DNA of 64,000 nucleotides from IMG/VR virus record IMGVR_UViG_3300025141_000020, positions 124,001 to 188,000 of that record; one strand, 5' to 3'. Position 1 is the first letter of the stretch; every line of letters starts with the position of its first letter. Under the pieces are notes generated by a model, which saw only the letters and a list, made by a program, of their open reading frames with translations, ran no database searches and was not told the DNA's origin. Below, piece by piece: positions 13,715 to 63,025 of this stretch. The position numbers and the translations under genes were made by a program.

Positions 13715-13721
13715 TATTTAT
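13715..13721 (+). promoter_or_regulatory. Putative late-promoter motif TATTTAT(A) on the sense strand (one of about 17 copies)
   Basis: Sense-strand copies upstream of starts. Plus: 13715, 18261, 43041, 63014. Minus (seen as (T)ATAAATA on +): 21855, 26816, 27584, 28881, 30752, 32498, 37339, 38101, 47304, 52128, 52925, 55781, 57993, 62602. Confidence 0.7.
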
Positions 13722-13725
13722 TAGT

Positions 13726-14109
13726 ATGCCAAGACCTAAAAGAAAACAAATAAATTTAACTAACGAAAGTGCTTTAAGTTTAATGCAGGAAATTTATAAT
13801 GAATGTGTTGAACAACGTACTACCGCTATCCGTATCCAAAATAAAATGATTGGGTTTATGAAAGAAGCTGCTGATATGGCTTTGATTGGTCCTGTATTGA
13901 AGGAACAACAAAAAATTATCGACTCCGCTATAGACAAAAAATTACAATTATCTAAACTAATGGCTACTATTATGAGTAAAAATAATGAAGGTAAGATTGC
14001 TGGTTCTGTCCTTGACGGTGATGTTAGAGAAACTTTAACGGAGTTACTTAGTGATATTAGTAAAGACACTAAAGATGATGGTGATAATAGTTTAGAATAT
14101 AAGATGTAA
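13726..14109 (+). CDS. Hypothetical protein (late motif upstream)
   Basis: Full ORF; TATTTAT ends 4 nt before the ATG. Confidence 0.7.
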   Translation: MPRPKRKQINLTNESALSLMQEIYNECVEQRTTAIRIQNKMIGFMKEAADMALIGPVLKEQQKIIDSAIDKKLQLSKLMATIMSKNNEGKIAGSVLDGDVRETLTELLSDISKDTKDDGDNSLEYKM

Positions 14110-16265
14110 TGCCAGATACTCAAAACACCCAAAAAGACATATTTTCAAAAGTAGAAGGTTTAATAGCTTTTTTAGATACTACTGATGAGAAAAAAGTTCG
14201 TGAAAATACTAAAGAATGGCAAGATACCCTGGAGGCTTTAAGGGATATAACAAATAATCCTCTCCCTTTTTTGTTGGGTTTGTTAAAAGAATTACAAGAG
14301 AGTAAGTTTGGTCAGAATGTTACCGCTAAAATTAAAGGTTTTAAAGCGGCAAAACGTAAAAAAAGAAAAGGTAAGGAGGGTGATGCAGATTTTAAAGAAA
14401 CTAAAAAATCTTTTAAAGAAAAACATTTAAAAGATAATTACGCTAATGTATGGTTAACTACACTCAATAGGTTAATTAAGAATGCGGTATTAACTGTACT
14501 GCCAAGAGTTAAAGACATTCTGGTCGAAGAAATAATAAAAGCTTTCAATTGTGATTTAACAACTTTAGTTCCTGTTGTGGGTGATGGGTTGTCTGGACCT
14601 CTTGTTATTGAGGTTGCGGAAATAGACTTACTTAAACAATTGTTTAATGACCCTTTACCAACCGCTGTACCTCCTAATCCTGCAGCTAAATACATGTATG
14701 AACAAAACCCACTTAATGGTGGTGCATACCCAGTTGGTACTAGCCCTTATCCAGTTAATCGTTTTTTACGGGACTTAATATATAATAACGCTACTCTTAT
14801 AGGTAACGGAGTTCCTGCAGCACCAAATACTATTAGAACAATATACGGTAAGAGTGGTAAAGCTTTATTTGATGTTGAGGTTCTTGCTGTGTTAGGTAAT
14901 CCGACAATCCTAAAGATATACCCTTATTATAAAACTGAAACGGGTAATACCCAATTTGCTAATGCTCCAGGGTGTAACGGTACTCCCCCTGCTGTTCCAG
15001 GTCAAGGAAGTAAATTTACTTTTATAGACTTCTTACACGACTATTTCAACAATATAGTGTTAATAGAATTACAAAATTTAGCGGGTGCTTTGTTGGAGAT
15101 ATTAACTGGTTTTATGAGTACCACAAATAAGGCTTTCAGCATTCAAGATTCAAAACACCTACAATGGTTTGTTGGTTTTGTTGAAAATGTTCTAAAGGCT
15201 TGTGATGGAGATGATTTAATAGGTCCTAATAGTGAGTCTATTGGTCACCACGCAGAATTAACAGATGAGGACAATTATTTTAACTTTACAGTAGAAGAAG
15301 AGCGTGCTATGATGTTAGAGGTAAGTCGTAAACAAAATAATGTATTAACCTTACAAAGTTGTGGTTCTTTGGATATCCCTATAGATAATAGTATGGTGGA
15401 TAAGGCTGTAGATGACATGCTAGCTACACAAGTAATGGAAGAGAAATTGCAAATATTTGATTTGCTACTTCAAAAACTGGCTAGGTCCTCAGCAAAAAAA
15501 GCTGGATATGATTTAGGATTAGGCACTATTACTTTACCTGTAGAAATTGATTTTAAAGAAAATATAATAAAAAAATTACCTCAGATATTGGTTTATTGTA
15601 TTATGAACCCTAAAGCCGTCCTTCCTTTAGTTATAACCGGTAAGATATTAAATCAAAATGGTCAATTATGTAGTTCTATAGACTTATTTGCAAAAGTATT
15701 TAGACGAGTTATTATTCGTGTTATCAAAGAAATACTTCAAGAAGTAACAAAAGAAATTATGAAAATGGTTAAACAGTATTTGTTACAAAAAATACGAGAG
15801 TTGATTAGAAGGAAATTAAGTGAACAAGCAAAGAAAAAAATACGAATGATTCGTAGATTATTAGATTTATTATTACCATTAATAAGTGCTTTAAATAACG
15901 CAAAAAACTGTCAAGAAATATATAACATATTATTAGGTTTACTAATGGCTAATATGCCTGACATACCCTTTAAAGTGCCAGCATTTTTAGTTTCTGCTGC
16001 AGAACTGAGAGCTGGAACCACTGCTTTAGGTACGTTTGAGAGATTTTTGACCAAGTGTCAACAAGATGGTATTCCTATAGGGGATTTACCTGATGGTAGT
16101 TCTAATATGATATTACCTGCATTTCGTAAAGCTTTTGAGGCTAAGGAAGAGGAGGATAGTGACCATAAAAAACTATTAGGTGTTATACCCCAAGGTCAAG
16201 TTATTACAGCTTTTGGTCCTGCGTCAATTGTGCCATTTACAAAGGTAACTGGTACGTCAGCTTAA
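14109..16265 (+). CDS. Large hypothetical protein, probably tail/baseplate-associated
   Basis: 718-aa ORF translationally coupled to the upstream gene (TAATG) and two genes before the gp5-like gene; no recognised motif. Confidence 0.45.
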   Translation: MPDTQNTQKDIFSKVEGLIAFLDTTDEKKVRENTKEWQDTLEALRDITNNPLPFLLGLLKELQESKFGQNVTAKIKGFKAAKRKKRKGKEGDADFKETKKSFKEKHLKDNYANVWLTTLNRLIKNAVLTVLPRVKDILVEEIIKAFNCDLTTLVPVVGDGLSGPLVIEVAEIDLLKQLFNDPLPTAVPPNPAAKYMYEQNPLNGGAYPVGTSPYPVNRFLRDLIYNNATLIGNGVPAAPNTIRTIYGKSGKALFDVEVLAVLGNPTILKIYPYYKTETGNTQFANAPGCNGTPPAVPGQGSKFTFIDFLHDYFNNIVLIELQNLAGALLEILTGFMSTTNKAFSIQDSKHLQWFVGFVENVLKACDGDDLIGPNSESIGHHAELTDEDNYFNFTVEEERAMMLEVSRKQNNVLTLQSCGSLDIPIDNSMVDKAVDDMLATQVMEEKLQIFDLLLQKLARSSAKKAGYDLGLGTITLPVEIDFKENIIKKLPQILVYCIMNPKAVLPLVITGKILNQNGQLCSSIDLFAKVFRRVIIRVIKEILQEVTKEIMKMVKQYLLQKIRELIRRKLSEQAKKKIRMIRRLLDLLLPLISALNNAKNCQEIYNILLGLLMANMPDIPFKVPAFLVSAAELRAGTTALGTFERFLTKCQQDGIPIGDLPDGSSNMILPAFRKAFEAKEEEDSDHKKLLGVIPQGQVITAFGPASIVPFTKVTGTSA

Positions 16266-16277
16266 AAAAAATAAATT

Positions 16278-16460
16278 ATGGAGTTTTTTAAAATATATAA
16301 GGAAAAATCAAATAAGGAGTTATCTGATATGTTGACTAACTTAAAGACTGAGTTTGATAAGACTAAGTCTTTATTAATTGGTTTGACACACCATTTAGAT
16401 GATATAGAAAAGAAATTTAAACTTATCGAGTCTGAATTAAAAAAACGTAAAGTTAATTAA
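16278..16460 (+). CDS. Small coiled-coil hypothetical protein
   Basis: 60-aa ORF filling the gap in the operon. Confidence 0.6.
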   Translation: MEFFKIYKEKSNKELSDMLTNLKTEFDKTKSLLIGLTHHLDDIEKKFKLIESELKKRKVN

Positions 16461-18259: not shown

Positions 18260-18283
18260 ATATTTATATATAAACATAATTTA

Positions 18284-20308
18284 ATGTCTATACACAGGTC
18301 ATATTTCAGTAAAAATAATACAATAATATCTAATAGTGCTACTAACACTGGTAGAAATCCCGTAACTCAATTATTTTATGGTAGAAATAGTTCACGATGC
18401 AAATTTACTGGATATAGTGGTGATACTTGTAATGATAAAACTGGATTCACTAAAACAGCTATTCATGGTTATAGTAGATTTATTTTTGATTTGGATTTAT
18501 CTGACTTAAGAACTAAATATACCAATTGTTGTATGCCTTTAACTTCTTGTACATATACTGGTGTATATGATGAGGCGGCGACCTTTAATTTTACATTTAC
18601 ATCTACAGGAGATACCATTAATTATATGAGTTTAGTTGACTCTGTTGGTTTAACTGTTAGTTATGTTAACATTTCTGCTAACACCGCCACTACTATTAAT
18701 GGTTCACACATTACTGATGGTGGTGGTAACCTATATACACAATTTATATATAATATAGGTACTACGTTATCAAATCAAGCTACAAATTTTTGTTTAGCTG
18801 TTAATGGTGTTAGTGGACATAATGGTAGTATTTTATGTACGTCTGATGGTGCTAATGTTACTTTAACACAAGCAGGTTTAGGTGCTTCAGGAAATACTCC
18901 TGTGTATCCTGGAAATCTTAGTAATTTAAGTGTTAATACTGGTAATTTTCAACTTATCTCAGATATAGTATTTAGTGCGACAACAAATCCTTGTTCTAAC
19001 GAATTTTGTGGTGGAGGGATAGGTACGGGCTTTGATACTTGTGATGGACAACCCTATTATTCAATAACTTACAACCCAGACGTTAAACACACTTTACGTA
19101 TGACAAATACGTCTAGTTTTGATGACCAATTGATAAATGGTAAGATTTTAGTTAATGATACTAGAAGAGCTACATCATTTACTCTGATGTTATATAAAGT
19201 GCCTACTTCAAAAACTTCATTATGGGATGAAGGTGTTGGGTATGACTATGAAGTACCTGCTGTTTCTCTTGAACCTGAGTATAACCTCACACAATCTAAT
19301 AGACCTAGTAATTGGATTAATAGTACAACTCTTTCGACTTGGCCTAACCCAGGAACTTATAATAACTTACTTCCCTCTTCTTACACTGTTTTAGCCACCC
19401 AAAGTTTTGATGCTGGTAATGAAGACATAGCTTTTAGTAGTATAGCTTTAAATAATGAAATTGGTAGTCAGTTAGCATCACCACAAACTGGTGTTACCTA
19501 TGGTATAGCTTTTTTACCACAATTTGAATTATTATCTGGTTTAACAGAAGCTTATTCTGTTGGTTTCTTTTCTAGGCACACCCAAACATATTTTGAGCCT
19601 TTCTTGGAAACTTCTTTTAATGATTATATAAATGATAGTAGGAACCACTTTGAGGTTGGGTGTGAAAATAGGTTATTTTTATACGCTTATGACTGCAATG
19701 GTGACCCTATGTGTTTCACACAGGACCCTGTGGTTTATATTAGAGATTGTAATGATATTGTAACTTCTACTATAACCGCTTCTACATTAACGTGTGGTGC
19801 TTACTACGTAGATTATACGATATTACCACCGTTACCACAGACGCCGCCTGTTCAATACACAGACGAATGGTCTAACCTTTTTGTGGGAGGCATATCACAA
19901 CCAAATATAACTAACGAGTTTATAATTCACACTAACGGTTATACTATAGGCACTACTGTTGTGAAACCAAAGATATTTGGTTATTCTGTTTCTGGTATTA
20001 AGAACGATGAAAAGATTAAAGCTGGTGATACTAGAAAAATATTTGTCTCTACTAGGGTTCCTTATACGGTAAATCAAGAAGTGTTAGTGGATAATATACA
20101 ATATAGGATATATGTTAAACAGGGTACTACTGAGGTGAGTGTTATTCCTTGGTCTAAAATAAACAAAACTTTTACTGATAATTACTTCTTATTAGATACT
20201 TCCTGGATGATACCTAACGAATATTACCTAGATATAAAAGCAACTTCTAATCAACAAGTAGATACTTATAGTAAAGTGATAAAATTTCAAATAACTAACC
20301 AATTATGA
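18284..20308 (+). CDS. Putative virion structural protein (Thr/Ser/Gly/Cys-rich, beta-rich)
   Basis: Late motif at 18261; composition typical of baseplate/appendage proteins; 15 Cys. Confidence 0.55.
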   Translation: MSIHRSYFSKNNTIISNSATNTGRNPVTQLFYGRNSSRCKFTGYSGDTCNDKTGFTKTAIHGYSRFIFDLDLSDLRTKYTNCCMPLTSCTYTGVYDEAATFNFTFTSTGDTINYMSLVDSVGLTVSYVNISANTATTINGSHITDGGGNLYTQFIYNIGTTLSNQATNFCLAVNGVSGHNGSILCTSDGANVTLTQAGLGASGNTPVYPGNLSNLSVNTGNFQLISDIVFSATTNPCSNEFCGGGIGTGFDTCDGQPYYSITYNPDVKHTLRMTNTSSFDDQLINGKILVNDTRRATSFTLMLYKVPTSKTSLWDEGVGYDYEVPAVSLEPEYNLTQSNRPSNWINSTTLSTWPNPGTYNNLLPSSYTVLATQSFDAGNEDIAFSSIALNNEIGSQLASPQTGVTYGIAFLPQFELLSGLTEAYSVGFFSRHTQTYFEPFLETSFNDYINDSRNHFEVGCENRLFLYAYDCNGDPMCFTQDPVVYIRDCNDIVTSTITASTLTCGAYYVDYTILPPLPQTPPVQYTDEWSNLFVGGISQPNITNEFIIHTNGYTIGTTVVKPKIFGYSVSGIKNDEKIKAGDTRKIFVSTRVPYTVNQEVLVDNIQYRIYVKQGTTEVSVIPWSKINKTFTDNYFLLDTSWMIPNEYYLDIKATSNQQVDTYSKVIKFQITNQL

Positions 20309-20903: not shown

Positions 20904-20932
20904 AAAAAAACCACTTATTAGGTGGTTTTTTT
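20904..20932. terminator. Bidirectional rho-independent terminator
   Basis: AAAAAAACCAC-TTATTAG-GTGGTTTTTTT between convergent genes. Confidence 0.8.
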
Positions 20933-21253: not shown

Positions 21254-21841
21254 TTAAACTTTTGAAGCTGTTACATTGTCACCAATATAAAACTGATTAC
21301 TTCCTTCTAGTCCTTGCCACATTGCCTGACGTACATCTGTTGCTTCATCAAAAACAACTTTAATTTTTAACGTATAGTAATTTGGGTAGGATATGTATAA
21401 CCCATTTTGTGCCATCTCCTCTTCATCTAATAATGCTCTTGCTACATTTGTTTTAACCGTTCCAGCTTCCGACTTTAGTATCATCGCTACATTACCTTCA
21501 GTTATATATGCATCATCAACTGGTAAGTCATAACCTCCAGCCTCAAGACTATAATAATTAGTTTTATGTCTTCCACCTACTGTACCTGTTATTTTTAAAT
21601 TCTTTGAGCTGGTATCGTAAACAAATAAATCTCTAGGTAGTCCATTCAGTAAGTTACCACCTAGGTTTCTCTCTACACCTGCTTCCGGGTCCGCCATTAC
21701 GTCTACATCGATTTCTATTTCTGGTTTTCTGTCCTCAACTTCAGTTAATACTGATGTAATTCGGTTATCTTTAGACTCTACTAAATGTAGCCCTCTAATC
21801 CTGTTCTTTTCTTCTTCTGTTAAACTAAATATATTTTTCAT
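21254..21841 (-). CDS. Hypothetical late protein with putative capsid-targeting leader
   Basis: MKNIFSLTEEEKNRIRGLHLVE...VLTE; late motif at 21855. Confidence 0.6.
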   Translation of the reverse strand: MKNIFSLTEEEKNRIRGLHLVESKDNRITSVLTEVEDRKPEIEIDVDVMADPEAGVERNLGGNLLNGLPRDLFVYDTSSKNLKITGTVGGRHKTNYYSLEAGGYDLPVDDAYITEGNVAMILKSEAGTVKTNVARALLDEEEMAQNGLYISYPNYYTLKIKVVFDEATDVRQAMWQGLEGSNQFYIGDNVTASKV

Positions 21842-21889
21842 AATATGGTTTATTTATAAATATCTAGTAGCAATAAAAAGGTTAATATG

Positions 21890-21921
21890 TTTGGTTATTA
21901 AAAAAATTATATTTATCTTTG
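21890..21921 (+). promoter_or_regulatory. Bacteroidota housekeeping-type promoter
   Basis: TTTG(21890)-N20-TATCTTTG(21914). Confidence 0.8.
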
Positions 21922-21961
21922 TAGTACAATTATCGGAAGTTTAATTATAAAATCAAAAAAA

Positions 21962-23351: not shown

Positions 23352-23382
23352 AAAAAAAAGCCCTCTTACGAGGGCTTTTTTT
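23350..23382. terminator. Bidirectional terminator ending the major capsid transcript
   Basis: A10-GCCCTC-TTAC-GAGGGC-T7. Confidence 0.9.
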
Positions 23383-23400
23383 AATATATTAGATTAATAA

Positions 23401-25197
23401 CTATCTAAGTTCTCTAACATCAAACGTTCTAACTCCGTCAACAGTGATTCTTCCGTAGAATCTATTGTTCACCATTTTCTTAGCGTATCTAGTCATGATA
23501 CCTTTGATTGGTGTAAAGTTGAATGGGTTATACATTGTAGGAGTTAACTGTAATGGTACATACGGTGCGTAAACGTACCCAGTATCCAATAAAGATGTTC
23601 CTTTATGTCCAATTAACACTTGGTTAGCTGGGAAGTAAGGGTCTCTATATACAGTAAATCTTCCTGATAATGTTCCAATTTTCTCAATACCCATATTGTA
23701 TTGGTCTTGGTCCGCTGCTGCGTTAGAAACGTGGAAGTATTCCAAGTCATCAAATATCGCAGAAACTTCAGAAGAACATACAATCCAGTTAGCCCCACCT
23801 CTTAAAGTAGACTTGTGGATTTGAGCTGAAATTTGGTTAACCGCTGTGATTAATGTTTGGTTCCAGTCTTTTTGAGTATATGGAGCTTGACCAGCTGAGA
23901 ATCTCTTCCAACCGTTGTAGTCCCATCTTAAATCCCAAGCTGCACCTTTTCTAAGGTCTCTTAAGATTTCTCTATCAATCTCTGCAGCAACTTCTTCAGA
24001 TAATAAAGCTGTTAATTCAGCTTCAGCATCTATGTTGTGGAATGCAGAAACGTCTTGTGCAAGTTCTGGTGACCATTGAGCTCTTAATTTTCTTTCACTT
24101 ACAGAAACTGTAACACCTTGAAGGTCGAAAGAAACTTCTCCCATATCTTCTTCAAATTCTAATGTAGCGTATTGTCTCCATTCTGCATTGAACTCAAAGT
24201 TTGCACCAGTTCCAGTCATACCAACATAACCATCAACTGAAGTACAACTAATACAAGCTGGACAAGAAGTATCAACCTCTAAATAGATATCTCCATTTGC
24301 GTCACACGTATCAGCTCTATCTACAATACCAAAACCGTATTTCTGTGTAACAACACGGAATAGGATTGGTGTTTGTGTTCCATACCCTAACGTTGAAGCT
24401 GCAATCTGATTACTTGTAGTTGCCGTAACAGAGTCACAACAAGATAAAATGTTAGCTGTAGTTAATTGTAATGAAGATAAGAAATCTTCTGTATCTTGCT
24501 CATTTCCATCAGGCCCAGTTAAAGTACCAACACCTGTTTGTGAGAAACCAGATAACTTAACAATAACACCTCTAGTACAAACTGTTACATCTCTTTGACC
24601 ATCACTTAATGCTGGTGGAACTGCTCCATTCCAGATAACCTCTACAGTACCTGCCGTTACGTTAGTGTATTTACCTCTAGAATAATCATAAGTACCATTA
24701 TCCATTTCTTGTGGTGAATTACCTGCATAGTAAGCGTCATATAGATTTCCTGTCGCTGCTGATACTGGATTAGCGTTGTTTGGATTTCCTGTTGACCCCA
24801 TTGGTGCTCCGTGAGTACCTGTACCAGGAGGTCCTACCTCTGTTCCTGCTACTACAGTTCTAGGTGTAATTTTAGGTACGAAGTAGAACAATTTACCAAT
24901 TGGTAAGTTCATAGCTTGTACAGAAACGATATCGTTAGCTAACAATTTCGAGAATACTCTTCTAATGATTGGAAATACAACCGTTTCGAAGGACCCTGAA
25001 TCACCAGCCGTCGTTGCTTCGTTTATTAAATTTGTTGCTTGGTTTTCATATAACTGTGCAACATTTTCTTTGACATGCCCTTTAAGTCCATCTAAGAACC
25101 CAAGACCATCCCATTTTTTTAAGGTATCTTCCTTGATAACTTTAAGGTGTTTTAAACCTATGTTACCAACCATACCTGATTCTAATAGTGCTCCCAT
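23401..25197 (-). CDS. gp23: Major capsid protein, T4 gp23-like, with an enlarged Cys-rich insertion
   Basis: VSVQAMNLPIGKLFY, RKLRAQWSPELAQDV, HNIDAEAEL, EIDREI, YAPYVPL, GIMTRY. Confidence 0.97.
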   Translation of the reverse strand: MGALLESGMVGNIGLKHLKVIKEDTLKKWDGLGFLDGLKGHVKENVAQLYENQATNLINEATTAGDSGSFETVVFPIIRRVFSKLLANDIVSVQAMNLPIGKLFYFVPKITPRTVVAGTEVGPPGTGTHGAPMGSTGNPNNANPVSAATGNLYDAYYAGNSPQEMDNGTYDYSRGKYTNVTAGTVEVIWNGAVPPALSDGQRDVTVCTRGVIVKLSGFSQTGVGTLTGPDGNEQDTEDFLSSLQLTTANILSCCDSVTATTSNQIAASTLGYGTQTPILFRVVTQKYGFGIVDRADTCDANGDIYLEVDTSCPACISCTSVDGYVGMTGTGANFEFNAEWRQYATLEFEEDMGEVSFDLQGVTVSVSERKLRAQWSPELAQDVSAFHNIDAEAELTALLSEEVAAEIDREILRDLRKGAAWDLRWDYNGWKRFSAGQAPYTQKDWNQTLITAVNQISAQIHKSTLRGGANWIVCSSEVSAIFDDLEYFHVSNAAADQDQYNMGIEKIGTLSGRFTVYRDPYFPANQVLIGHKGTSLLDTGYVYAPYVPLQLTPTMYNPFNFTPIKGIMTRYAKKMVNNRFYGRITVDGVRTFDVRELR

Positions 25198-25231
25198 AAT
25201 TTTTTTAATTTTTTTAAGCGTTTATTTATTA

Positions 25232-26758: not shown

Positions 26759-26868
26759 GTTTTTTATTTTTTTTAAAAATTGTTAGGTGCATACATAGTA
26801 TATGCACGGTTTTATTATAAATATAAGTTTATTGTAAAAAATCCTTCTTAGGATTGAATTAAAGTGAT

Positions 26869-27570: not shown

Positions 27571-27637
27571 ATTTCTCTTTTTTTATAAATATAAAACTAG
27601 ATAAAAAAAACTATTAATGTTTAAGTATTGTTTTAAA

Positions 27638-28075: not shown

Positions 28076-28119
28076 AATATTAACTTTTTACTTAAGTTAA
28101 TAATAACAATTGTGATGTT

Positions 28120-28866: not shown

Positions 28867-28891
28867 AAGTATGGTTTATATATAAATATAC

Positions 28892-30727: not shown

Positions 30728-30771
30728 TGCTTGTAATAATATATATTATATTATAAATAGTATACCTTTCC

Positions 30772-32493: not shown

Positions 32494-32525
32494 ATATTAT
32501 AAATATAATCGTTAGGTAATAATAG

Positions 32526-35239: not shown

Positions 35240-36930
35240 TACTTTATACTACCTTCTCTCGTAATAAATATATTTTTGTTATCTGACAATATAGCTATAT
35301 CACCCCTTTTAGTTACCCCTTTAAGTTTAGAATATTTATTTTCGTTTAAATATTTTTTAACACCTAACTCTTGTTCAACAGTTTTAGATAACTTTTTTAT
35401 AGTTTCGTTAGTTTGGTTTTTTCCAATTTTTTCTTTTATGTACTGTTGTGGTGTTTGTTTTGTAACATAAGATTCTAATAGCTTTGATACTCTATTTTTT
35501 AAGGATTTCATCGCTACACCTTCTTTTACAGCTGCTTTTCCTCCGTCTTTTGCTTTATATGTCTTTATAATATGTTTAAGAGCTTTTAAGATAACCCCAC
35601 CTGGGAACACTAACGCAGCTGCTTCAATCATTTTAATTTGTGCGGCAGTGAATTTTTGTATTGCTTTTTCATCTTTAGCTTTTTTTATTAGTTTAGCTAA
35701 CTCTGGTTTTACAAATGGTAACATTGGTAGTACTGGGGCCAGCAGAAATTGTTCTTTAAGAGGTAGTTTTGTACCTTTCGTAAGAGTTTTCCCTACGAAT
35801 CTGAGTGCTTTTTTACCTTTTTTAGATTTTAATGAGTCAACTGCTTTTAATATTGCTGTAATCCCGACAAATATAGGTCCTGATGGAAATGCGGCTAGAC
35901 CTGCCGTTAGTAGGGCTATCTCTGTCTTAGTTAGTGTGGATGCATCTTTCTCACCTTTAGCAATTGCGTCTTTGAGTTTCTTACTAATAAATTCTAACAT
36001 CTTCTTAGCCATCTTATGTTGTTCTGACATAATATTTTTACGTCTTCTCCTTGATTCTGGTAACATTACGTCCATATCAAATTCTTCACCTTCACCTTCA
36101 TCCTCAAGACCTTCCATGTCTTCAGTATCATCTATTGCTAACTCATCGTCATCTATAGCTAATTCTTCATCACCTAGTTCTTCATCACCGTATGCAGTTT
36201 CGTCTTCTTCGAATCTTGATAATATATCTTCTCTGTCTTCGTCATCTAACACATCTAAATCTACAGCGGATATAACTGAATTTATAACATACTTTATATC
36301 TGCACTTCCTATCTCTTCTCCAGCGTCTCTAAGTTTTTGACCTAATTTACCGGTAAGTTTTTGAATTGGTTTCATAAACCCTTCCATTTCTTCTTCCTCC
36401 TCACCTTCTTCATCATCCATCGCTAACTCTTCATCATCCATCGCTAACTCTTCATCATCCATCGCTAACTCTTCATCATCACCTAAATCAAAATCCTCTT
36501 CACCACCAATTTCGTCAGTTGTAACATCTACTTCAGCTTCAGGTGTTTTTAAAACAAATTTGTTTTCTTCACTAGCTTGTTCAAATATTGGGTCTGATTC
36601 ACCATTATTAAATTCTTCATTTATTGGTTTAAAAATTAAATTCATTCTTTTTAATGCTGAACTATAACTTCTAAATCTATTTCTTTTTTTGTTGTGTAGT
36701 CCATCAAGATAATCTAACTCCGATTCATTAATCCCTCTTTTTAGGTAGTATCCATCTTTTTCTTGAATAATAGCGTACGTGTTTCCATCACTAGCTTTTT
36801 TACTAAACGATAACGTTTTAGTGTGGTAAGAATCATTTTTCTTTGTCTCACCATAGGTCGCGATTTCCATAATTCTCTTAATCTTATCTTGACCTGTTAA
36901 TTTTTCACTTCCGATTGGTTTTAATCCCAT
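35239..36930 (-). CDS. Acidic putative capsid-internal/core polyprotein
   Basis: Leader KIKRIMEIATYGE; DDEELAM repeats; two hydrophobic FP-x-G modules. Confidence 0.55.
   Translation of the reverse strand: MGLKPIGSEKLTGQDKIKRIMEIATYGETKKNDSYHTKTLSFSKKASDGNTYAIIQEKDGYYLKRGINESELDYLDGLHNKKRNRFRSYSSALKRMNLIFKPINEEFNNGESDPIFEQASEENKFVLKTPEAEVDVTTDEIGGEEDFDLGDDEELAMDDEELAMDDEELAMDDEEGEEEEEMEGFMKPIQKLTGKLGQKLRDAGEEIGSADIKYVINSVISAVDLDVLDDEDREDILSRFEEDETAYGDEELGDEELAIDDDELAIDDTEDMEGLEDEGEGEEFDMDVMLPESRRRRKNIMSEQHKMAKKMLEFISKKLKDAIAKGEKDASTLTKTEIALLTAGLAAFPSGPIFVGITAILKAVDSLKSKKGKKALRFVGKTLTKGTKLPLKEQFLLAPVLPMLPFVKPELAKLIKKAKDEKAIQKFTAAQIKMIEAAALVFPGGVILKALKHIIKTYKAKDGGKAAVKEGVAMKSLKNRVSKLLESYVTKQTPQQYIKEKIGKNQTNETIKKLSKTVEQELGVKKYLNENKYSKLKGVTKRGDIAILSDNKNIFITREGSIK
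36408..36480. repeat. 21-bp tandem repeat x3.5 (encodes DDEELAM)
   Basis: CTTCATCATCCATCGCTAACT at 36408, 36429, 36450 plus a partial copy. Confidence 0.95.
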
Positions 36931-37320: not shown

Positions 37321-37349
37321 AACTAAATATTCTTTTGTTATAAATAGTC

Positions 37350-38096: not shown

Positions 38097-38121
38097 ATTA
38101 ATAAATATATGGACTTTATTA

Positions 38122-43035: not shown

Positions 43036-43052
43036 GGTGATATTTATTGCCA

Positions 43053-47292: not shown

Positions 47293-47312
47293 ACTTATTT
47301 TATTATAAATAT

Positions 47313-47972: not shown

Positions 47973-47997
47973 AAAAGGACCTAACGGTCCTTTTTTT
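47973..47997. terminator. Bidirectional terminator after tmRNA
   Basis: AAAAGGACC-TAAC-GGTCCTTTTTTT. Confidence 0.85.
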
Positions 47998-52117: not shown

Positions 52118-52144
52118 ATCTATACTATATAAATATAAATACCG

Positions 52145-52167
52145 AAAAAGGTGGAATAATCCACCTT
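52145..52167 (-). terminator. Rho-independent terminator
   Basis: AAGGTGGA-ATAA-TCCACCTT with a T5 tract on the minus strand. Confidence 0.7.
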
Positions 52168-52495: not shown

Positions 52496-52912
52496 CTAAA
52501 GTCTACGGGATTTTAACCAAAATATTTCTCTTCCGGCTCTAGTTTCTAACGCTCTTAATTTTTGTTTAGACTTTTTCATATCTAAGTCTTTGTTGGTGTC
52601 TAAATCCAGCATTTGATATTCGTTAAATTCTAATATGTCCGCAAGTAATTCTTCAGTATATTGTACTCTGTCTTGTAATTGTTCTATTTGGTCTTGTTGT
52701 AAGCCCATAATCTCTTCTGGTGATAAGAGTTGTTCTAACTCGTCCTCAATACCACTGATATCATCTTCAGCGTCATAAACCTCCTCCCCTTCATCATTAA
52801 TCATATTAGCTCTATCTAAAACTCTAAGAACCTCATCTTCACCGGTCTCTTGTTCTAGTATGTTCTTAAGCACACCATCTAATTGTTCTTCGGAAATTTT
52901 AATTCTTTTCAT
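52496..52912 (-). CDS. Acidic late protein with ISExQL-type leader
   Basis: MKRIKISEEQLDGVLKNILEQ; late motif at 52925. Confidence 0.6.
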   Translation of the reverse strand: MKRIKISEEQLDGVLKNILEQETGEDEVLRVLDRANMINDEGEEVYDAEDDISGIEDELEQLLSPEEIMGLQQDQIEQLQDRVQYTEELLADILEFNEYQMLDLDTNKDLDMKKSKQKLRALETRAGREIFWLKSRRL

Positions 52913-52946
52913 CTTTGTTTTTATTATAAATATAACCTAATATTTA

Positions 52947-53147: not shown

Positions 53148-53327
53148 ATGACAAGTAATCAAGAAGATACCATGTATACCATCCACACCCAAGTGGAAGA
53201 ATTAAATATATCTAAAGAATTTCATATTCAGGTAGAAAAAATGTGTACCCAAGATAAACATAAATGGAAAGATATGTGTGAGAAATGGGAGTACGCATTT
53301 AATAAAATTAAAAATAAAGCAAAATAA
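53148..53327 (+). CDS. Small hypothetical protein (59 aa), not in ORF track
   Basis: ATG 53148 to TAA 53325-27, MTSNQEDTMYTIH...KIKNKAK; terminator follows immediately. Confidence 0.6.
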   Translation: MTSNQEDTMYTIHTQVEELNISKEFHIQVEKMCTQDKHKWKDMCEKWEYAFNKIKNKAK

Positions 53328-53357
53328 AAACCTTGGCCGTCACCAAGGTTTTTTTTT
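53326..53357 (+). terminator. Rho-independent terminator
   Basis: AAAAACCTTGG-CCGTCA-CCAAGGTTTTTTTTT. Confidence 0.85.
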
Positions 53358-55430: not shown

Positions 55431-55739
55431 TTAACTAATGTAATATTTTAATTTTTCTTCGTATAAGTATCCTGGTTGTACTCCCTGCATAGATTCTTGC
55501 ACTTCACCATTTTTGATTATCGTTACGTTTGGAATCCCTCTTATACCATATCTTGCGGCTAATGATTGCATTTTATCAACATTAACTTTTAATATGTTAT
55601 TTGGGTATTGTTCTTTTAATTTATCTATTGTTGGTGTTAACATCCTACATGGCCCACACCATGGAGCCCAGAAATCTACTAACACAACTTCTTCACTTTT
55701 TAGTTTTTGGTCAAAAACCTGTTCACTAATTATATCCAT
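55431..55739 (-). CDS. trxA: Thioredoxin
   Basis: VLVDFWAPWCGPCRML, KVNVD, YGIRGIP. Confidence 0.97.
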   Translation of the reverse strand: MDIISEQVFDQKLKSEEVVLVDFWAPWCGPCRMLTPTIDKLKEQYPNNILKVNVDKMQSLAARYGIRGIPNVTIIKNGEVQESMQGVQPGYLYEEKLKYYIS

Positions 55740-55797
55740 TTGTTTTATTTTATATTAAAAATACTTATTTTATTCATATAATAAATAGTCATAATAT

Positions 55798-56401: not shown

Positions 56402-57988
56402 CTATTTAGCAGCTGTTTTAGTAGTAATAGGGATACCACATTTATTTAATGTTAATAGTTTTGTGTTGGCTAAATCCCCTCTTTTCATTTTAATAGTAGG
56501 TTGTCCATCATAAACTTCCCCATTATAATTTTCTATAGTAACCCATGGAACATCACTATGACTACCCGAAAACCCTAAATTTAAATTTACATCCCCGTAA
56601 AATGCACAAGTATTATTAAAATTCGGAGGGGCAAACCCGGAAGGAGCGGGTGATACACCAAAACAAGGAGGTACTGATTCACCGGCGGACCCTACTTTTT
56701 TCATTACGACTAAAGCTTGCATTGAAAGTATTATCTCGTCCTCTGTTTCTGCCATTATTTGTGTAGCTTGTTCTGGGGTAACAGTAAATGTTACAGCTCT
56801 ACTACCACCAAATTTACCATCATCTATACCGTCCCTATCTCTTGCGGCATATGTTGAAGCTAACATTTGTCTTGGTTTTAGGTCAAACTGATTTCTCCAA
56901 TCAGGTATTTCTCCAATCATTTTTTCTCCCTCTTCATTAGTAAACTCCATAGGTTCTTGTGGACCATAACGTATTGCCTTTCTTAACATTTTTCCTATGT
57001 CACTTTTCTTTAATACATATCCATTCTTGAGTTCAGTTCCAACATCATTTGCTGTTACGTATGCCGCAGGAAGGTCATAATATGGTATGGAATTAGCTGC
57101 TTCAGGGGTAAATACATCTAAAGCCCCATTATTTAGGTTTGCTATTCCTAAACTAACACCATTCATTTTAACATCAAAAATTGCTTCATCACAAAAATGA
57201 TTATGTTGTCCTTTATTGGTATAGTATCCGATAGTACATTTTAGGTGTACTAAGCAGTCTTCTTCAACTTCATAGATTTTTTCAATAAAAGAGAATACTA
57301 AAGTGATTATTAAAGCTTGTCCTTTTTTAGGTGCTTTAGAGTCTTCATTGTTATCATCTGTAGCTCCTCCAGTATCAATAATAAAACCTTCTGGATTTGT
57401 AGATAATTTACTAACATCTATTTTTTCCTCTTTAAACAATGGTATTATTGCCTCGATAAATCTCTTAGCTCTCCTAGTAGCTAAATCTTTGTTAGCTTCT
57501 ATATTTTCACTTTTTTCGGTAAAAAAAGTTCCTGGGTATGAGCCTGCTTTTTTTAATTCTAACCATTTTTTCCAATCACCTTTATAACCATCTTTCGCCG
57601 CTAATTCTTCCCATCTTTCATCAGTAACCTCCACTAGTTTTTTATTGTCCTCACCTACGAAATCATTTCCTATTTCTGGTATCATAGGTTTCCTCCAGTA
57701 ATTACTTGCTCCCGCTTTAACGTCAATAGAGTCTAACTGTAATTTACCGGCTTTTAGTAGGGCTGCGTGTTGGGTGTTACTATTAATTTCTTTGATAATA
57801 CCTGCGACTACAGTGTTTATGAATGGTGAAGGGTCGTCCACACCTGTTGGGTAATTATATTCATACCTTAAGGGTATTTCTATATCTATATCGGAGACTA
57901 GTTTTCTTATATAAACCATTTCTTGTTCTCTAATAAGACCCATAATCTCTCTAGCTCTGTTAACCTCAGATAAAATATTCTTTTTCAT
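56402..57988 (-). CDS. Late protein with EINR-type leader and OmpA_C-like domain
   Basis: MKKNILSEVNRAREIMGLIREQ; late motif at 57993; AGASN...ANKDLATRRA. Confidence 0.55.
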   Translation of the reverse strand: MKKNILSEVNRAREIMGLIREQEMVYIRKLVSDIDIEIPLRYEYNYPTGVDDPSPFINTVVAGIIKEINSNTQHAALLKAGKLQLDSIDVKAGASNYWRKPMIPEIGNDFVGEDNKKLVEVTDERWEELAAKDGYKGDWKKWLELKKAGSYPGTFFTEKSENIEANKDLATRRAKRFIEAIIPLFKEEKIDVSKLSTNPEGFIIDTGGATDDNNEDSKAPKKGQALIITLVFSFIEKIYEVEEDCLVHLKCTIGYYTNKGQHNHFCDEAIFDVKMNGVSLGIANLNNGALDVFTPEAANSIPYYDLPAAYVTANDVGTELKNGYVLKKSDIGKMLRKAIRYGPQEPMEFTNEEGEKMIGEIPDWRNQFDLKPRQMLASTYAARDRDGIDDGKFGGSRAVTFTVTPEQATQIMAETEDEIILSMQALVVMKKVGSAGESVPPCFGVSPAPSGFAPPNFNNTCAFYGDVNLNLGFSGSHSDVPWVTIENYNGEVYDGQPTIKMKRGDLANTKLLTLNKCGIPITTKTAAK

Positions 57989-58003
57989 ATATTATAAATA
58001 GTA

Positions 58004-58110
58004 GAAACATTAGTTAAGTTATACCGTATAATATAATACAATTAACTTGGTCGTTTAACTTAAATTTATTATCTTTGTAGTATGAAAAAATTAATCACAG
58101 TATTATTATT
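58004..58110 (+). repeat. About 107-bp imperfect direct repeat (copy 2 at 58618-58724) containing the promoter and CAP signal-peptide start
   Basis: GAAACATTAGTTA...CAATTAACTTGGTCGTTTAACTTAAATT...ATGAAAAAATTA recurs at offset 614; promoters CTTG-N20-TATCTTTG (58046-58077) and CTTG-N20-TACCTTTA (58660-58691). Confidence 0.9.
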
Positions 58111-58609
58111 ATTCCTTTCCATATTTTCTTATGGTCAAACTAAGTTAGATTTACTTATTTTCGAAAAAGTGAATAACTATCGTACACAAAATGGTTTATC
58201 TCCGTGGGCATGGGATAATAGGGTTTTCGTGGTGGCTGAAAAACACAATAATTATCAACTAAGTGTAAGTGATATTTCACATGACGAATTAGTTGATGTT
58301 GTAGGTCATGAAGAAATTAATAGGTTAGCTCATCGTTTTGACGCTATTTTTACTAATTGGTTACGTTGTGGGGAAAATATTGCTGTTGTAAACACATCTG
58401 ATATGACATTAGAAAAAATTGCTAATACAACATTAGAAATGTGGATTGATTCCCCACCGCATAATAAAATACTTTTGTCTGCAACTAAATATTGTGGTGG
58501 AGCTATAAGCTCTCACCACAGTACAACCTGGTCACGTTCTAAATATGCTTCTCACAATAGTTGGGTGTACGTTACCTTAAATTTGTATGGTGGTTCTATA
58601 TATAACTAA
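58082..58609 (+). CDS. Secreted CAP-domain protein, paralog 2
   Basis: Signal peptide ...SYG-Q; VNNYRTQNG, HNNY, SHDE, GENIA, WIDSPPHNKIL. Confidence 0.85.
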   Translation: MKKLITVLLLFLSIFSYGQTKLDLLIFEKVNNYRTQNGLSPWAWDNRVFVVAEKHNNYQLSVSDISHDELVDVVGHEEINRLAHRFDAIFTNWLRCGENIAVVNTSDMTLEKIANTTLEMWIDSPPHNKILLSATKYCGGAISSHHSTTWSRSKYASHNSWVYVTLNLYGGSIYN

Positions 58610-58695
58610 TATATCTCGAAACATTAGTTAGATTATATCGTATAATATAATACAATTAACTTGGTCGTTTAACTTAAATTCCTTACCTTTACATT

Positions 58696-59223
58696 ATGAA
58701 AAAATTACTCACAGTCTTATTAACTATTTTAACTTTCTGTTCATACGGACAACAACGTATTGTAGAAGCAGAAAAAATCATTTTTAGAATGGTAAACGAA
58801 TATAGAGTGTCTCAAGGGTTAGACGCTGTTGTATGGTCTGAAGACGCGTATAATGCAGCGTATCACCACTCATCTTATATGTCTAATAAAGGTGTCCCTT
58901 ATGCACACACTGAAACTGTTGATGTGGATGGTCATGAGGAGATAAGTAACCCTCAGATGAGAATAGCGAAGTATTGTAGCCCTTCTTCTTGGGGTACGGA
59001 ATGTATGGCGGGTCTTCCTTTATTATCGTGGACCGTAGAACCTTGGGATTTAGAGAAAGCGTGTCGTACAGTAGTAAATAATTGGATTAATTCTCCCGGA
59101 CACAAAAAAGCTATATTATATGATAAAGAAGGTAACGGTAACCTTAGTATTGGAGCTGTGAGCGTAATTAAGTTAAATTATTGTGAGAGTTCAATCCCGG
59201 TATTAGTCTTGGTGAACAAATAA
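58696..59223 (+). CDS. Secreted CAP-domain protein, paralog 3
   Basis: Signal peptide ...SYG-Q; VNEYRVSQG, HSSYM, HTE, E, WINSPGHKKAIL. Confidence 0.85.
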   Translation: MKKLLTVLLTILTFCSYGQQRIVEAEKIIFRMVNEYRVSQGLDAVVWSEDAYNAAYHHSSYMSNKGVPYAHTETVDVDGHEEISNPQMRIAKYCSPSSWGTECMAGLPLLSWTVEPWDLEKACRTVVNNWINSPGHKKAILYDKEGNGNLSIGAVSVIKLNYCESSIPVLVLVNK

Positions 59224-62071: not shown

Positions 62072-62081
62072 GGTTTTTATT

Positions 62082-62564
62082 TTAATTCCACATTACTGTT
62101 ATAGTTTTATCGTCTAAATCAACGTGTAGGTTTGTAGGTAATATAGTGTGGTATCTTTCATTATCTTTTTCATCATAATAATACCACATATCTGGGTCAT
62201 CACTTTTAAATCCACCCATGTCATCTACATTTAATTCAATTTCTTTTTCCACCTCTACCTTAGTGTAGTCTTCGTCATAAATCTCAATCGCTCCTTTTAT
62301 CACTACACTAGTCGTGTAAATGCTTATATCTTTAATACCCCAACTTCTTACGTCTAAATCAAACCTCCAATTTACAACACAATCTAGATATGATATGTCC
62401 ATATCTCGGTCTTTATATTCCGGGAAATAGTTTTGTAGTCCAGAAAAATCTATATCATCTACTTGTGTGCTAAATGAGTTTGGGTCGTCGTCCCATTGTT
62501 CTGTTATAACCTTATCTATTATTTTAACTAATTGGTCTTGTTTAAGTGATATTTTTTTTCTCAT
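62082..62564 (-). CDS. Acidic late protein with ISxxQL-type leader
   Basis: Likely start MRKKISLKQDQLVKIIDKVITEQ at 62564; late motif at 62602. Confidence 0.6.
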   Translation of the reverse strand: MRKKISLKQDQLVKIIDKVITEQWDDDPNSFSTQVDDIDFSGLQNYFPEYKDRDMDISYLDCVVNWRFDLDVRSWGIKDISIYTTSVVIKGAIEIYDEDYTKVEVEKEIELNVDDMGGFKSDDPDMWYYYDEKDNERYHTILPTNLHVDLDDKTITVMWN

Positions 62565-62655
62565 AGTATTAAAAGCTAATTTGCTGGCTTGCTTGCATAT
62601 AATAAATATAAGCATTATACTATAAATATTAATATATTTTTACTATAATTAATAT

Positions 62656-62997
62656 ATGAAAAATTTAATTCTTTGTATGGTAGTTTTTGTAATCGCTCAG
62701 ACTATGGTGTGGTTACAACTAAACGGACAATTTGTCTGGGAATCTTTTCGTAAATATGAATGGGTGTTAATTCTTTTCGGACTCCCAATTAGTTGGTTGT
62801 TTTTAGAAGCCACTAGACATGGTGTAACTGCTTTTGATGGGTTGCTTTGGCCCCAAAGATTTCTTGCTTTCGCTTGTGGAATTATTATTTTTAGTTTATT
62901 TACTTGGCTATTTAAAGGTGAAGGTATTAACACAAAAACAATGATTTCTCTTGGTTTGGCTAGTTGTTTAGTTTTAATACAAATTTTCTGGAAATAA
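62656..62997 (+). CDS. Small 4-TM membrane protein (SMR/DMT-like)
   Basis: 113 aa with four hydrophobic segments. Confidence 0.6.
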   Translation: MKNLILCMVVFVIAQTMVWLQLNGQFVWESFRKYEWVLILFGLPISWLFLEATRHGVTAFDGLLWPQRFLAFACGIIIFSLFTWLFKGEGINTKTMISLGLASCLVLIQIFWK

Positions 62998-63025
62998 ACT
63001 GTAACTACACTAGTATTTATATAAT

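What the first reader, a model, noticed from the sequence alone, without database searches (positions are those of the whole stretch)
13715..63021. Late-gene motif reads TATTTAT(A) on the sense strand, the reverse complement of the T4 late promoter
About 17 structural or leader-bearing genes on both strands have TATTTAT(A) on the coding strand, typically 4-45 nt (up to 58) before the start: scaffold/MCP, protease, portal, terminase, 18284, 37320, 38096, 43053, 47292, 52117, 52912, 57988, 63026 and others. T4 gp55 promoters are TATAAATA on the coding strand (established). The polarity is consistently flipped here for plus- and minus-strand genes alike, and a gp55-like sigma gene is in the window. 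This suggests a distinct late sigma specificity. The AT-rich background is a caveat.
Basis: partly seen in the sequence, partly recalled or inferred. Interest (0 to 1): 0.6.

Follow-up and report, generated by a model that had tools for sequence, protein, structure and literature searches.

The report
Late-gene promoter motif of Flavobacteria phages
A short all-A/T word, TATTTAT(A), sits just upstream of about a quarter of the genes of this uncultured marine giant phage and is almost certainly its late promoter, probably read by a very divergent phage-encoded sigma factor. It is a two-base variant of the classic T4 late promoter rather than a flipped copy of it.

Summary
In the window, 17 of 69 genes have TATTTAT on their own strand within 45 nt of the start, against 3.5 ± 1.75 in dinucleotide shuffles. 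In the whole 210-kb contig the figure is 46 against 8.0 ± 2.6. The reverse complement is not enriched.

The heptamer is invariant at orthologous spacers in dozens of related metagenomic phages, including one with 52% GC. The same motif and the same sigma family occur in the cultured Flavobacterium phage immuto, ahead of annotated structural genes. That phage's early genes use a different, host-type two-part promoter.

No -35-like element accompanies the motif. Terminator hairpins precede two sites. Metatranscriptome contigs stop in the bin that holds the predicted capsid-operon promoter.

The protein at 13007-13708 has a confident sigma region 2 fold, but its similarity to T4 gp55 is weak.

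The "flipped polarity" reading is not needed. TATTTATA differs from TATAAATA at two central positions in the same orientation. My verdict is a new variant of the phage-sigma late-promoter system, and no start site has been mapped.

The parts
13007..13708 (+). Divergent sigma-70-family protein (233 aa), the candidate late sigma factor
   Evidence: Pfam Sigma70_r2 scores E 0.0058, below the cut-off; phrog_234 'late sigma' scores E 8e-4. A family profile hits SigA region 2 at E 0.005 and T4 gp55 at E 0.33. 16 of 45 relatives match Sigma70_r2. The AlphaFold model has pLDDT 91. Residues 12-115 superpose on sigmaE region 2 bound to -10 ssDNA at Z 9.6 and rmsd 2.7 A. The C-terminal domain gives only weak region-4-like hits, Z 4.5-6.2.
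13715..13721 (+). TATTTAT, 4 nt before the ATG of 13726-14109, the small conserved gene right after the sigma gene
   Evidence: The heptamer is invariant in all 47 distinct related spacers, 4-7 nt from the ATG, while the rest of the spacer varies. It is also the only TATTTAT in a 9953-bp relative with 52.5% GC.
18261..18267 (+). TATTTAT, 16 nt before 18284-20308
   Evidence: The motif is kept in 37 of 37 distinct orthologous spacers.
21856..21862 (-). TATTTAT, 14 nt before 21254-21841
26817..26823 (-). TATTTAT, 58 nt before 25232-26758 (putative scaffold, by position only), at the head of the operon that ends with the major capsid gene 23401-25197. A hairpin at 26786-26808 lies in the leader.
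   Evidence: Contigs from four marine metatranscriptomes cover 23400-26845 and essentially nothing from 26846 to 29200.
27585..27591 (-). TATTTAT, 14 nt before the head maturation protease gene 26869-27570
   Evidence: phrog_207 at E 3e-46
28882..28888 (-). TATTTAT, 15 nt before 28120-28866
30753..30759 (-). TATTTAT, 25 nt before the portal gene 28892-30727
   Evidence: phrog_213 at E 4e-68
32499..32505 (-). TATTTAT, 5 nt before the large terminase gene 30772-32493. A terminator-like hairpin at 32525-32548 precedes it.
   Evidence: phrog_2 at E 3e-38; hairpin
35264..35270 (-). TATTTAT, 24 nt before 34829-35239, inside the end of the upstream gene
37340..37346 (-). TATTTAT, 19 nt before 36961-37320
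38101..38107 (-). TATTTAT, 4 nt before 37350-38096
43041..43047 (+). TATTTAT, 5 nt before the ATG at 43053 (43053-44153)
47305..47311 (-). TATTTAT, 12 nt before 46675-47292
52129..52141 (-). Two overlapping TATTTAT copies, 11 and 17 nt before 51665-52117. A terminator-like hairpin at 52149-52166 precedes them.
52926..52932 (-). TATTTAT, 13 nt before 52496-52912
55781..55787 (-). TATTTAT, 41 nt before 55431-55739 (thioredoxin-like). This is the weaker, more distant case.
57994..58000 (-). TATTTAT, 5 nt before 56402-57988
62622..62628 (-). TATTTAT, 6 nt before 62082-62615
63014..63020 (+). TATTTAT, 5 nt before 63026 (the gene runs off the window)

Best explanation
TATTTAT, with extended consensus (A/G/C, never T)-TATTTAT-(A>T), is the core and probably the only sequence-specific element of this phage's late promoters. 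The phage is a roughly 300-kb, T4-like-capsid marine jumbo phage that most likely infects Bacteroidota.

Proposed mechanism: host core RNA polymerase carrying the phage sigma-family protein encoded at 13007-13708 binds the element through its region 2 domain on the non-template strand, without a -35 contact. It then starts transcription a few bases downstream.

Where the motif ends 4-6 nt from the ATG (13 of 45 sites in the contig), the mRNA would be leaderless or nearly so. Where it ends 11-19 nt away (28 of 45), the leader would be about 5-13 nt and A-rich.

Shown here: enrichment, strand specificity, conservation, the lack of an upstream element, the association with structural genes, the sigma region 2 fold, and the co-occurrence of motif and sigma family in a cultured relative.

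Inferred only: that the element is a promoter, that this particular protein reads it, where transcription starts, and that expression is late.
For: 1. Enrichment over an AT-matched background. Window: 17 against 3.5 +/- 1.75. Contig: 46 against 8.0 +/- 2.6. Immuto: 29 against 5.9 +/- 2.3. In the contig, 27% of all copies lie in 1.25% of the search space, a 22-fold enrichment, while every one-mismatch variant is enriched 5-fold or less.
2. Strand specificity in non-coding DNA: 47 sense against 6 antisense.
3. Phylogenetic footprints. The heptamer is invariant in 47 of 47 distinct spacers after the sigma gene and in 37 of 37 before the 18284 orthologue. Spacers before two orthologous genes that lack the motif score 0 of 9 and 0 of 2. 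Across 80 related loci the top upstream 8-mers are ATATTTAT (235 sense, 49 antisense) and GATATTTA (126 sense, 7 antisense).
4. In a 52.5% GC relative, the only TATTTAT in 9953 bp (0.6 expected) lies in the 24-nt spacer after its sigma gene.
5. No conserved position was found between -50 and -2 relative to the motif.
6. Downstream genes include the protease, portal, large terminase, capsid operon, tail sheath and adaptor.
7. Terminator-like hairpins lie directly upstream of the sites at 32499 and 52135.
8. Contigs from four metatranscriptomes cover the capsid operon up to the 26649-26845 bin, which holds the motif at 26817, and leave the next 2.3 kb empty.
9. The sigma region 2 fold.
10. The cultured Flavobacterium phage immuto has a member of the same sigma family (E 4e-35). 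Its first TATTTAT site after that gene sits directly behind it, 20 of its 29 sites lie in the structural half, and its early genes use a distinct host-type two-part promoter.
Against: - No transcription start has been mapped. The RNA evidence comes from assembled contigs in 197-nt bins, which cannot show 5' ends.
- The link between this sigma and the motif rests on co-occurrence and gene position only.
- A DnaB-like helicase gene also carries the motif, so the class is not purely structural.
- A cyanophage with a member of the same sigma family (Mel-JY01, E 3e-29) shows no motif enrichment in the 40 kb examined. Family membership alone therefore does not predict the motif.
- If the C-terminal domain is a true region 4 (weak hits only), the absence of a -35 element would need explaining.
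- Sites 4-5 nt from the ATG require a start unusually close to the element.
Confidence: 0.65

Rival explanations
1. The motif is a promoter, but the host primary sigma (the Bacteroidota sigmaABfr type) reads it as a variant of the -7 element. Timing would be set by something other than the phage sigma-like protein.
For: TATTTATA shares T1, A2, T5 and T7 with the host -7 consensus TAnnTTTG (consensus as quoted in PMC7366714). The hexamer TATTTA is also embedded in immuto's early -7 element, TAtaTTTAGgtat. The short distance to the start codon fits a -7-type geometry, as at the host-type sites TATCTTTGTAGT-ATG in the window.
Against: TATTTAT sites lack any -33-like element. Immuto early promoters carry a conserved TTGC 17-19 nt upstream together with a G-containing -7 box. 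No gene in the contig has both signals. The two classes go with different gene sets. The exact heptamer is far more constrained than the host consensus.
Confidence: 0.12
2. The motif acts in the RNA (UAUUUAU) and not as a promoter, for example as a processing site, a stability element or a translation-initiation enhancer placed just ahead of start codons.
For: An RNA element would show the same strict sense-strand specificity and closeness to start codons. Many sites follow the upstream stop codon directly, with no terminator. Bacteroidota lack Shine-Dalgarno use and rely on A/U-rich upstream context (background in PMC7366714 and its reference 8). One site, at 35264, lies inside upstream coding sequence.
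Against: The motif heads transcription units directly after terminator hairpins and in divergent spacers. RNA contig coverage ends at the motif-bearing bin of the capsid operon. The capsid gene, among the most highly expressed, has no motif before its own start and shares the site 58 nt upstream of the preceding gene. The bimodal spacing of about 5 and about 16 nt, with an A at the sixth base after the heptamer in 38 of 45 sites, fits start-site selection. Position relative to the ATG varies from 4 to 58 nt.
Confidence: 0.1
3. True polarity inversion. The factor recognises the T4-type word TATAAATA on the template strand, or the sites are T4-type promoters firing away from the adjacent gene.
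For: 34 of 45 sites read TATTTATA, whose complement is exactly TATAAATA. Template-strand promoter recognition has a precedent in the phage AR9 non-virion polymerase (title and abstract of PMC5449584).
Against: The sigma region 2 fold matches domains that bind the non-template strand. Outward-firing promoters would produce antisense RNA to upstream genes at 46 sites and would not explain the fixed spacing to downstream start codons. The word differs from T4's by only two bases in the same orientation, so no inversion is needed. AR9 uses a different, non-sigma system.
Confidence: 0.04
4. Chance: an AT-rich word that simply turns up in AT-rich spacers.
For: The window-wide count is unremarkable, 60 against 54.9 expected. 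The genome is 33.6% GC.
Against: Shuffles of the very same upstream segments never reach the observed counts. The reverse complement is not enriched. The heptamer is invariant at orthologous sites and present in a 52% GC relative.
Confidence: 0.01

Closest known systems
Bacteriophage T4 late promoters (TATAAATA) read by gp55 with gp33 and the gp45 sliding clamp
   Same: Both are a single 8-bp all-A/T -10-like element with no -35 element. Both adhere tightly to the consensus, number about 50 copies per genome, lie ahead of late genes on either strand, and use host core polymerase plus a phage protein with a sigma region 2-like domain (T4 facts from PMC2988020 and PMC7892883). Six of the eight bases are identical in the same orientation.
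   Different: Positions 4 and 5 are TT instead of AA. One of these corresponds to T4 position -9, a base that gp55 flips into a pocket (PMC7892883). The element must lie closer to the start site in the sites that are 4-5 nt from the ATG. The protein is 233 aa with an extra C-terminal helical domain and only marginal sequence similarity to gp55. No gp45-type clamp or gp33 was detected in the contig or in the complete immuto genome.
Bacteroidota primary-sigma (sigmaABfr) promoters: TTTG at -33 and TAnnTTTG at -7
   Same: Both are A/T-rich elements beginning with TA and lying very close to the start site. Both operate in a host group without Shine-Dalgarno use. Host-type sites in the same window give leaderless spacing.
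   Different: The late motif has no -33 partner, no G, and different conserved positions. It goes with a different gene set, and in immuto the two classes are clearly separate.
Other phage-encoded late sigma systems, such as Bacillus phage SPO1 gp33/gp34 (recalled from memory, not tested here)
   Same: A phage-encoded sigma redirects host polymerase to a dedicated late consensus.
   Different: Those promoters are bipartite, with both -35 and -10 elements. Here only one element is conserved.

Membership tests
T4-type late promoter | Consensus TATAAATA on the non-template strand | tested here: not met
   The consensus here is TATTTAT(A). TATAAATA itself is not enriched upstream of genes: 4 against 2.6 in the window and 6 against 5.5 in the contig. 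Six of eight positions agree.
T4-type late promoter | No conserved -35 element | tested here: met
   Information content stays at or below 0.26 bit at every position from -50 to -2 relative to the heptamer, across 45 sites.
T4-type late promoter | Tight adherence to one short consensus, tens of copies, ahead of late genes on both strands | tested here: met
   46 sense-upstream copies in the contig. The exact word is enriched 22-fold, variants 5-fold or less. Sites lie ahead of the protease, portal, terminase, capsid operon and tail sheath.
T4-type late promoter | Transcription starts at a fixed distance downstream, and late in infection | not testable with these tools
   Only assembled metatranscriptome contigs were available. 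The sixth base after the heptamer is A in 38 of 45 sites, which is suggestive only.
T4 gp55 family | Significant sequence similarity to gp55 | tested here: inconclusive
   phrog_234 scores E 8e-4 and 4.4e-5 in the one-genome search, but that profile also hits 8 of 14 control cellular genomes. The family profile against 7d7c_F gp55 gives E 0.33. gp55 is not among the top 50 structural matches.
T4 gp55 family | Works with a gp45 sliding clamp (and gp33) through a C-terminal clamp-binding motif | tested here: not met
   PF02916 and PF09116 find nothing in the contig (66% complete by CheckV) or in the complete immuto genome. Divergent clamps could have been missed. I did not search for gp33 by profile.
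Sigma-70 family | Region 2 fold (core binding and -10 recognition) | tested here: met
   Model pLDDT is 91. Residues 12-115 match sigmaE region 2 bound to -10 ssDNA (4lup_C) at Z 9.6 and rmsd 2.7 A over 93 residues. Every one of the 50 listed structural matches is a sigma factor or a complex that contains one.
Sigma-70 family | Pfam Sigma70_r2 above the gathering score | tested here: not met
   The window protein scores 16.8 bits against a cut-off of 24. 16 of 45 relatives match at E 0.01 or better, the best at 2e-5.
Sigma-70 family | Region 4 (-35 recognition) | tested here: inconclusive
   The C-terminal model (pLDDT 90) gives its best hits at Z 6.3. These include sigmaH, SigA, sigmaE, SigR and sigma28 region 4 at Z 4.5-6.2, which is within the noise range for small helical domains. 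No member of the 45-sequence alignment matched a Sigma70_r4 model at E 0.01 or better.
Bacteroidota sigmaABfr promoter | TAnnTTTG at -7 together with TTTG at about -33 | tested here: not met
   The late motif lacks the TTTG core and any upstream partner. TAnnTTTG is not enriched across the contig, 12 sense against 14 antisense, and never coincides with a TATTTAT site.

The most novel reading that the evidence does not exclude
The polarity really is inverted: the phage factor reads a T4-type TATAAATA on the template strand. A milder version is that about a third of the late genes of a globally abundant phage clade are expressed as leaderless mRNAs, from a promoter element that abuts the start codon.
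Probability: 0.05. Interest if true: 0.85.

Novelty: new variant of a known kind. Interest (0 to 1): 0.55.

Why it matters
The sigma family has about 8000 close homologues in marine metagenomes and 1187 cluster representatives at 50% identity. Every homologue that carries a source name, immuto's included, is called "hypothetical protein". I found no paper describing the motif.

A defined late promoter word would give several things:
- a way to split early from late genes in hundreds of uncultured Bacteroidota-type jumbo phage genomes, most of whose genes have no known function;
- better start-codon and operon calls;
- a natural two-base specificity variant to set beside the structurally solved gp55/TATAAATA complex.

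Because phage immuto and its host Flavobacterium sp. LMO8 are cultured, every inferred step can be tested directly.

Tried and rejected
- Megablast of 7 kb against GenBank phages found nothing.
- A single-sequence PDB search with the sigma gave only spurious hits.
- Foldseek on the full model gave only weak E-values, 0.03 or worse, because the domains are arranged differently. The VIA re-alignment was more informative.
- The fold of the C-terminal domain stayed inconclusive, and a profile of it against PDB found nothing.
- The search for related loci with two distant sigma homologues found nothing in IMG/VR. Exact look-ups worked instead.
- The idea that host-type TAnnTTTG sites would mark most non-late genes in this contig failed, at 12 sense against 14 antisense. 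Only five near-identical TATCTTTGTAGT-type sites exist in the window. The early region may lie in the missing third of the genome.
- Microcystis phage Mel-JY01 has a member of the sigma family but shows no TATTTAT enrichment.
- gp45 clamp profiles found nothing.
- I did not obtain a residue-level alignment to the gp55 pocket residues.
- I did not test host assignment directly. It rests on immuto's known host, on the A-rich upstream context without Shine-Dalgarno motifs, and on a paper that predicts Bacteroidota hosts for a similar lineage (PMC12619734). I did not check whether that lineage is the same clade.


Full report
**What the window is.** The window is bases 124001-188000 of a single 210,568-bp IMG/VR virus contig with 33.6% GC. 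CheckV rates the contig about 66% complete. It encodes:
- a T4-type major capsid protein at 23401-25197(-) (phrog_138, E 1e-65);
- a prohead protease at 26869-27570(-);
- a portal protein at 28892-30727(-);
- a large terminase at 30772-32493(-);
- elsewhere in the contig, a tail sheath and an adaptor.

The nearest deposited capsid relatives are Flavobacterium phage vB_FspM_immuto, an uncultured 484-kb phage, and Microcystis phage Mel-JY01. Upstream regions are A-rich and lack Shine-Dalgarno words. Together with the immuto relationship, this points to a Bacteroidota host. That is an inference and I did not test it directly.

**Checking the observation.** Counted over the whole window, TATTTAT is not over-represented: 60 copies against 54.9 +/- 6.6 expected. 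Its placement is another matter.
- Seventeen of 69 genes carry it on their own strand within 45 nt of the start. Dinucleotide-preserving shuffles of those same segments give 3.5 +/- 1.75, and none of 2000 shuffles reached 17.
- The reverse complement ATAAATA (7 against 6.5) and the T4 word TATAAATA (4 against 2.6) are at background.
- In the whole contig the figures are 46 against 8.0 +/- 2.6.
- 27% of all copies fall in the 1.25% of sequence space that lies sense-upstream of a start. That is a 22-fold enrichment, and no one-mismatch variant exceeds 5-fold.
- In non-coding DNA the split is 47 sense to 6 antisense (p = 6e-9).

The sense strand upstream of genes is A-rich, so composition would favour the opposite orientation.

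**Anatomy of the sites.** I aligned 45 sites from the contig.
- The base before the heptamer is A in 30, G in 9, C in 6 and never T.
- The base after it is A in 34 and T in 9.
- The sixth base after it is A in 38 of 45.
- Nothing is conserved from -50 to -2.
- The spacing to the ATG is bimodal: 4-6 nt at 13 sites and 11-19 nt at 28 sites.

Two sites, at 32499 and 52135, lie directly behind G+C-rich hairpins followed by T runs. The capsid gene has no motif of its own. The nearest one, at 26817, lies 58 nt ahead of the preceding gene and is followed by a leader hairpin.

**Conservation.** The protein at 13007-13708 belongs to a very large marine metagenomic family. I fetched eighty IMG/VR loci whose copy of this protein is 57-89% identical to the window's.
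- Across these loci the most frequent upstream 8-mers are ATATTTAT (235 sense, 49 antisense), TATTTATA (207, 90) and GATATTTA (126, 7).
- In all 47 distinct versions of the spacer after the sigma gene, the heptamer is invariant and sits 4-7 nt from the ATG. The rest of the spacer changes in both length and sequence.
- In all 37 distinct versions of the spacer before the 18284 orthologue the motif is likewise kept. Spacers before two orthologous genes that lack the motif in the window show it in 0 of 9 and 0 of 2 cases.
- A relative with 52.5% GC, whose sigma is 38% identical, has a single TATTTAT in 9953 bp (0.6 expected). It lies in the 24-nt spacer after its sigma gene.
- A relative whose sigma is 29% identical also has the motif after its sigma gene. 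One whose sigma is 34% identical has it before three other genes but not at that spacer.

**A cultured replicate.** A profile of the sigma family finds a 240-aa ORF in the complete genome of Flavobacterium phage vB_FspM_immuto_3-5A at E 4e-35. It is annotated as hypothetical protein immuto35A_152. In that genome 29 of 228 genes have a sense TATTTAT within 45 nt, against 5.9 +/- 2.3 expected.
- The gene directly after the sigma gene has one, and 20 of the 29 lie in the structural half of the genome.
- They precede the annotated large terminase, gp20 portal, tail fibre or spike genes, structural proteins, tail sheath, tail completion protein, baseplate hub and tape measure.
- One more sits ahead of a gene group that includes the chitinase and holin genes.

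The densely spaced small genes at 60-77 kb in immuto use a quite different, highly repeated two-part signal: TTGC, then 17-19 nt, then TAtaTTTAGgtat. This matches the published Bacteroidota primary-sigma pattern of TTTG at -33 and TAnnTTTG at -7 (PMC7366714). The phage therefore has two separate promoter classes, and its sigma gene lies at the boundary between them.

**RNA evidence.** This evidence is limited. Four marine metatranscriptomes held as assembled contigs, several of them 100% identical to the window, cover 23400-26845, which is the capsid gene and the gene before it. They leave 26846-29200 essentially empty. The last covered 197-nt bin contains the motif at 26817-26823. This fits a transcription unit that starts there, and the empty stretch argues against DNA carry-over. 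Contigs cannot show 5' ends, however, and lower expression of the neighbouring genes would look the same.

**The protein.**
- Pfam Sigma70_r2 scores below its cut-off (E 0.006), and 16 of 45 relatives match it.
- The family profile hits SigA region 2 at E 0.005 and T4 gp55 at E 0.33.
- The AlphaFold model is confident, with pLDDT 91.
- Residues 12-115 superpose on sigmaE region 2 bound to its -10 non-template strand at Z 9.6 and rmsd 2.7 A over 93 residues. Every one of the 50 listed structural matches is a sigma factor or a complex that contains one.
- Modelled alone, the C-terminal 96 residues give only weak matches. Several region 4 domains appear among them, at Z 4.5-6.2.
- gp45-type clamp profiles find nothing in the contig or in the complete immuto genome.

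The protein is therefore a divergent sigma-70-family member. Calling it gp55-like goes beyond the evidence.

**How it most likely works.** The data fit a cascade in which host-sigma promoters drive early genes. In immuto the nearest recognisable promoters upstream of the sigma gene are of this early type, which suggests that the sigma gene is transcribed early. The phage sigma then directs core polymerase to TATTTAT(A) elements, which need no -35 contact.

Sites only 4-5 nt from conserved start codons, such as the MPRP/MGRP gene after the sigma gene, force the start to lie within about 4-5 nt of the heptamer. That places the element nearer the start than in T4 (-13 to -6, PMC2988020, PMC7892883) and implies leaderless or near-leaderless mRNAs for about a third of the sites. 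This part is inference.

**The "flip".** TATTTATA is the reverse complement of TATAAATA. Read in the same direction, the two words also differ only at positions 4 and 5. In the T4 open complex, gp55 flips the non-template bases at -12, -9 and -8 into pockets (PMC7892883). In the same register, the motif here keeps A at -12 and -8 and changes -10 and -9 from A to T. A shifted base preference in a region 2 domain is therefore a sufficient explanation. A true inversion, meaning template-strand reading or outward firing, is not excluded by direct evidence. It is unnecessary, though, and outward firing in particular does not fit the fixed spacing to downstream start codons.

**Rivals.**
- Recognition by the host primary sigma (about 0.12).
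- An RNA-level element (about 0.10).
- True inversion (about 0.04).
- Chance (about 0.01, refuted by the statistics and the conservation).

**Novelty.** The searches of the held literature for the word together with late promoters, for gp55 consensus variants and for immuto returned no description of this motif. Reviews list T4-family variants only at positions -13 and -12 (PMC2988020). A recent paper on large aquatic phages with predicted Bacteroidota hosts notes a shared sigma factor but makes only one, unrelated mention of a promoter (PMC12619734). I rate the finding a new variant of a known kind of system. It is well supported as a sequence signal, but its mechanism has not been tested.

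Noticed in passing
window 21914-21925, 44165-44176, 44825-44836, 58070-58081, 58684-58695 (+ strand): There are five near-identical TATCTTTGTAGT-type boxes that fit TAnnTTTG. Three of them abut an ATG, 4 nt after the G, which gives leaderless spacing, and the same three have aacTTGGt about 19 nt upstream. They look like host-type Bacteroidota (early) promoters and resemble the early promoters of phage immuto. The genes at 58082-58609 and 58696-59223 are both 175 aa and share nearly identical upstream regions, yet are only about 29% identical as proteins.
   Followed up: partly
window 26786-26808 (- strand): A 7-8 bp hairpin (GTGCATA ... TATGCAC) sits in the predicted 5' leader of the scaffold/capsid operon, between the motif at 26817 and the start at 26758. 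It could be an mRNA-stabilising 5' stem-loop.
   Followed up: no
window 13726-14109 (+): A small gene (127 aa, basic N-terminus MPRPKRK, acidic C-terminus) always follows the sigma gene and always has the motif 4-7 nt from its ATG in relatives. It has no Pfam or PHROG match. It might be a partner in late transcription or a small terminase.
   Followed up: partly
window 1-13000 (+): A long co-directional block encodes sugar-modifying enzymes (GT2 glycosyltransferase, an HMGL-like/cytidylyltransferase fusion) and PhoH just upstream of the sigma gene. The order glycosyltransferase, sigma, small gene, roughly 620-aa gene is conserved down to relatives whose sigma is 34-38% identical. The block starts at contig position 112810 behind a TATTTAT site, so the promoter that first expresses the sigma gene in this phage is unidentified.
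   Followed up: partly
window 20905-20931, 23354-23381, 47971-47996, 53326-53353: Strong two-way terminator hairpins (10-bp stems flanked by A and T runs). The first two lie between convergent genes, and 23354-23381 lies just after the capsid gene.
   Followed up: no
window 40993-43035 (+): A 680-aa protein matches a phage 'ATP-dependent protease' family (phrog_4871, E 9e-234), which is an unusual auxiliary gene. Two thioredoxin-like small genes lie at 38367-38804 and 55431-55739.
   Followed up: no
contig G000 41887-63107 and 80142-86201 (loci L083-L085): There is a run of very large ORFs (1137, 1387, 1254, 2883 and 2019 aa). The four that I scanned have no PHROG match; I did not scan the 2883-aa ORF.
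   Followed up: no
L095 (Microcystis phage Mel-JY01, PP395634.1 158797-159459): This cyanophage encodes a member of the same sigma family (E 3e-29). Its genes have AGG-type ribosome-binding sites and show no TATTTAT enrichment in 40 kb, so the family may have changed specificity between host phyla.
   Followed up: partly
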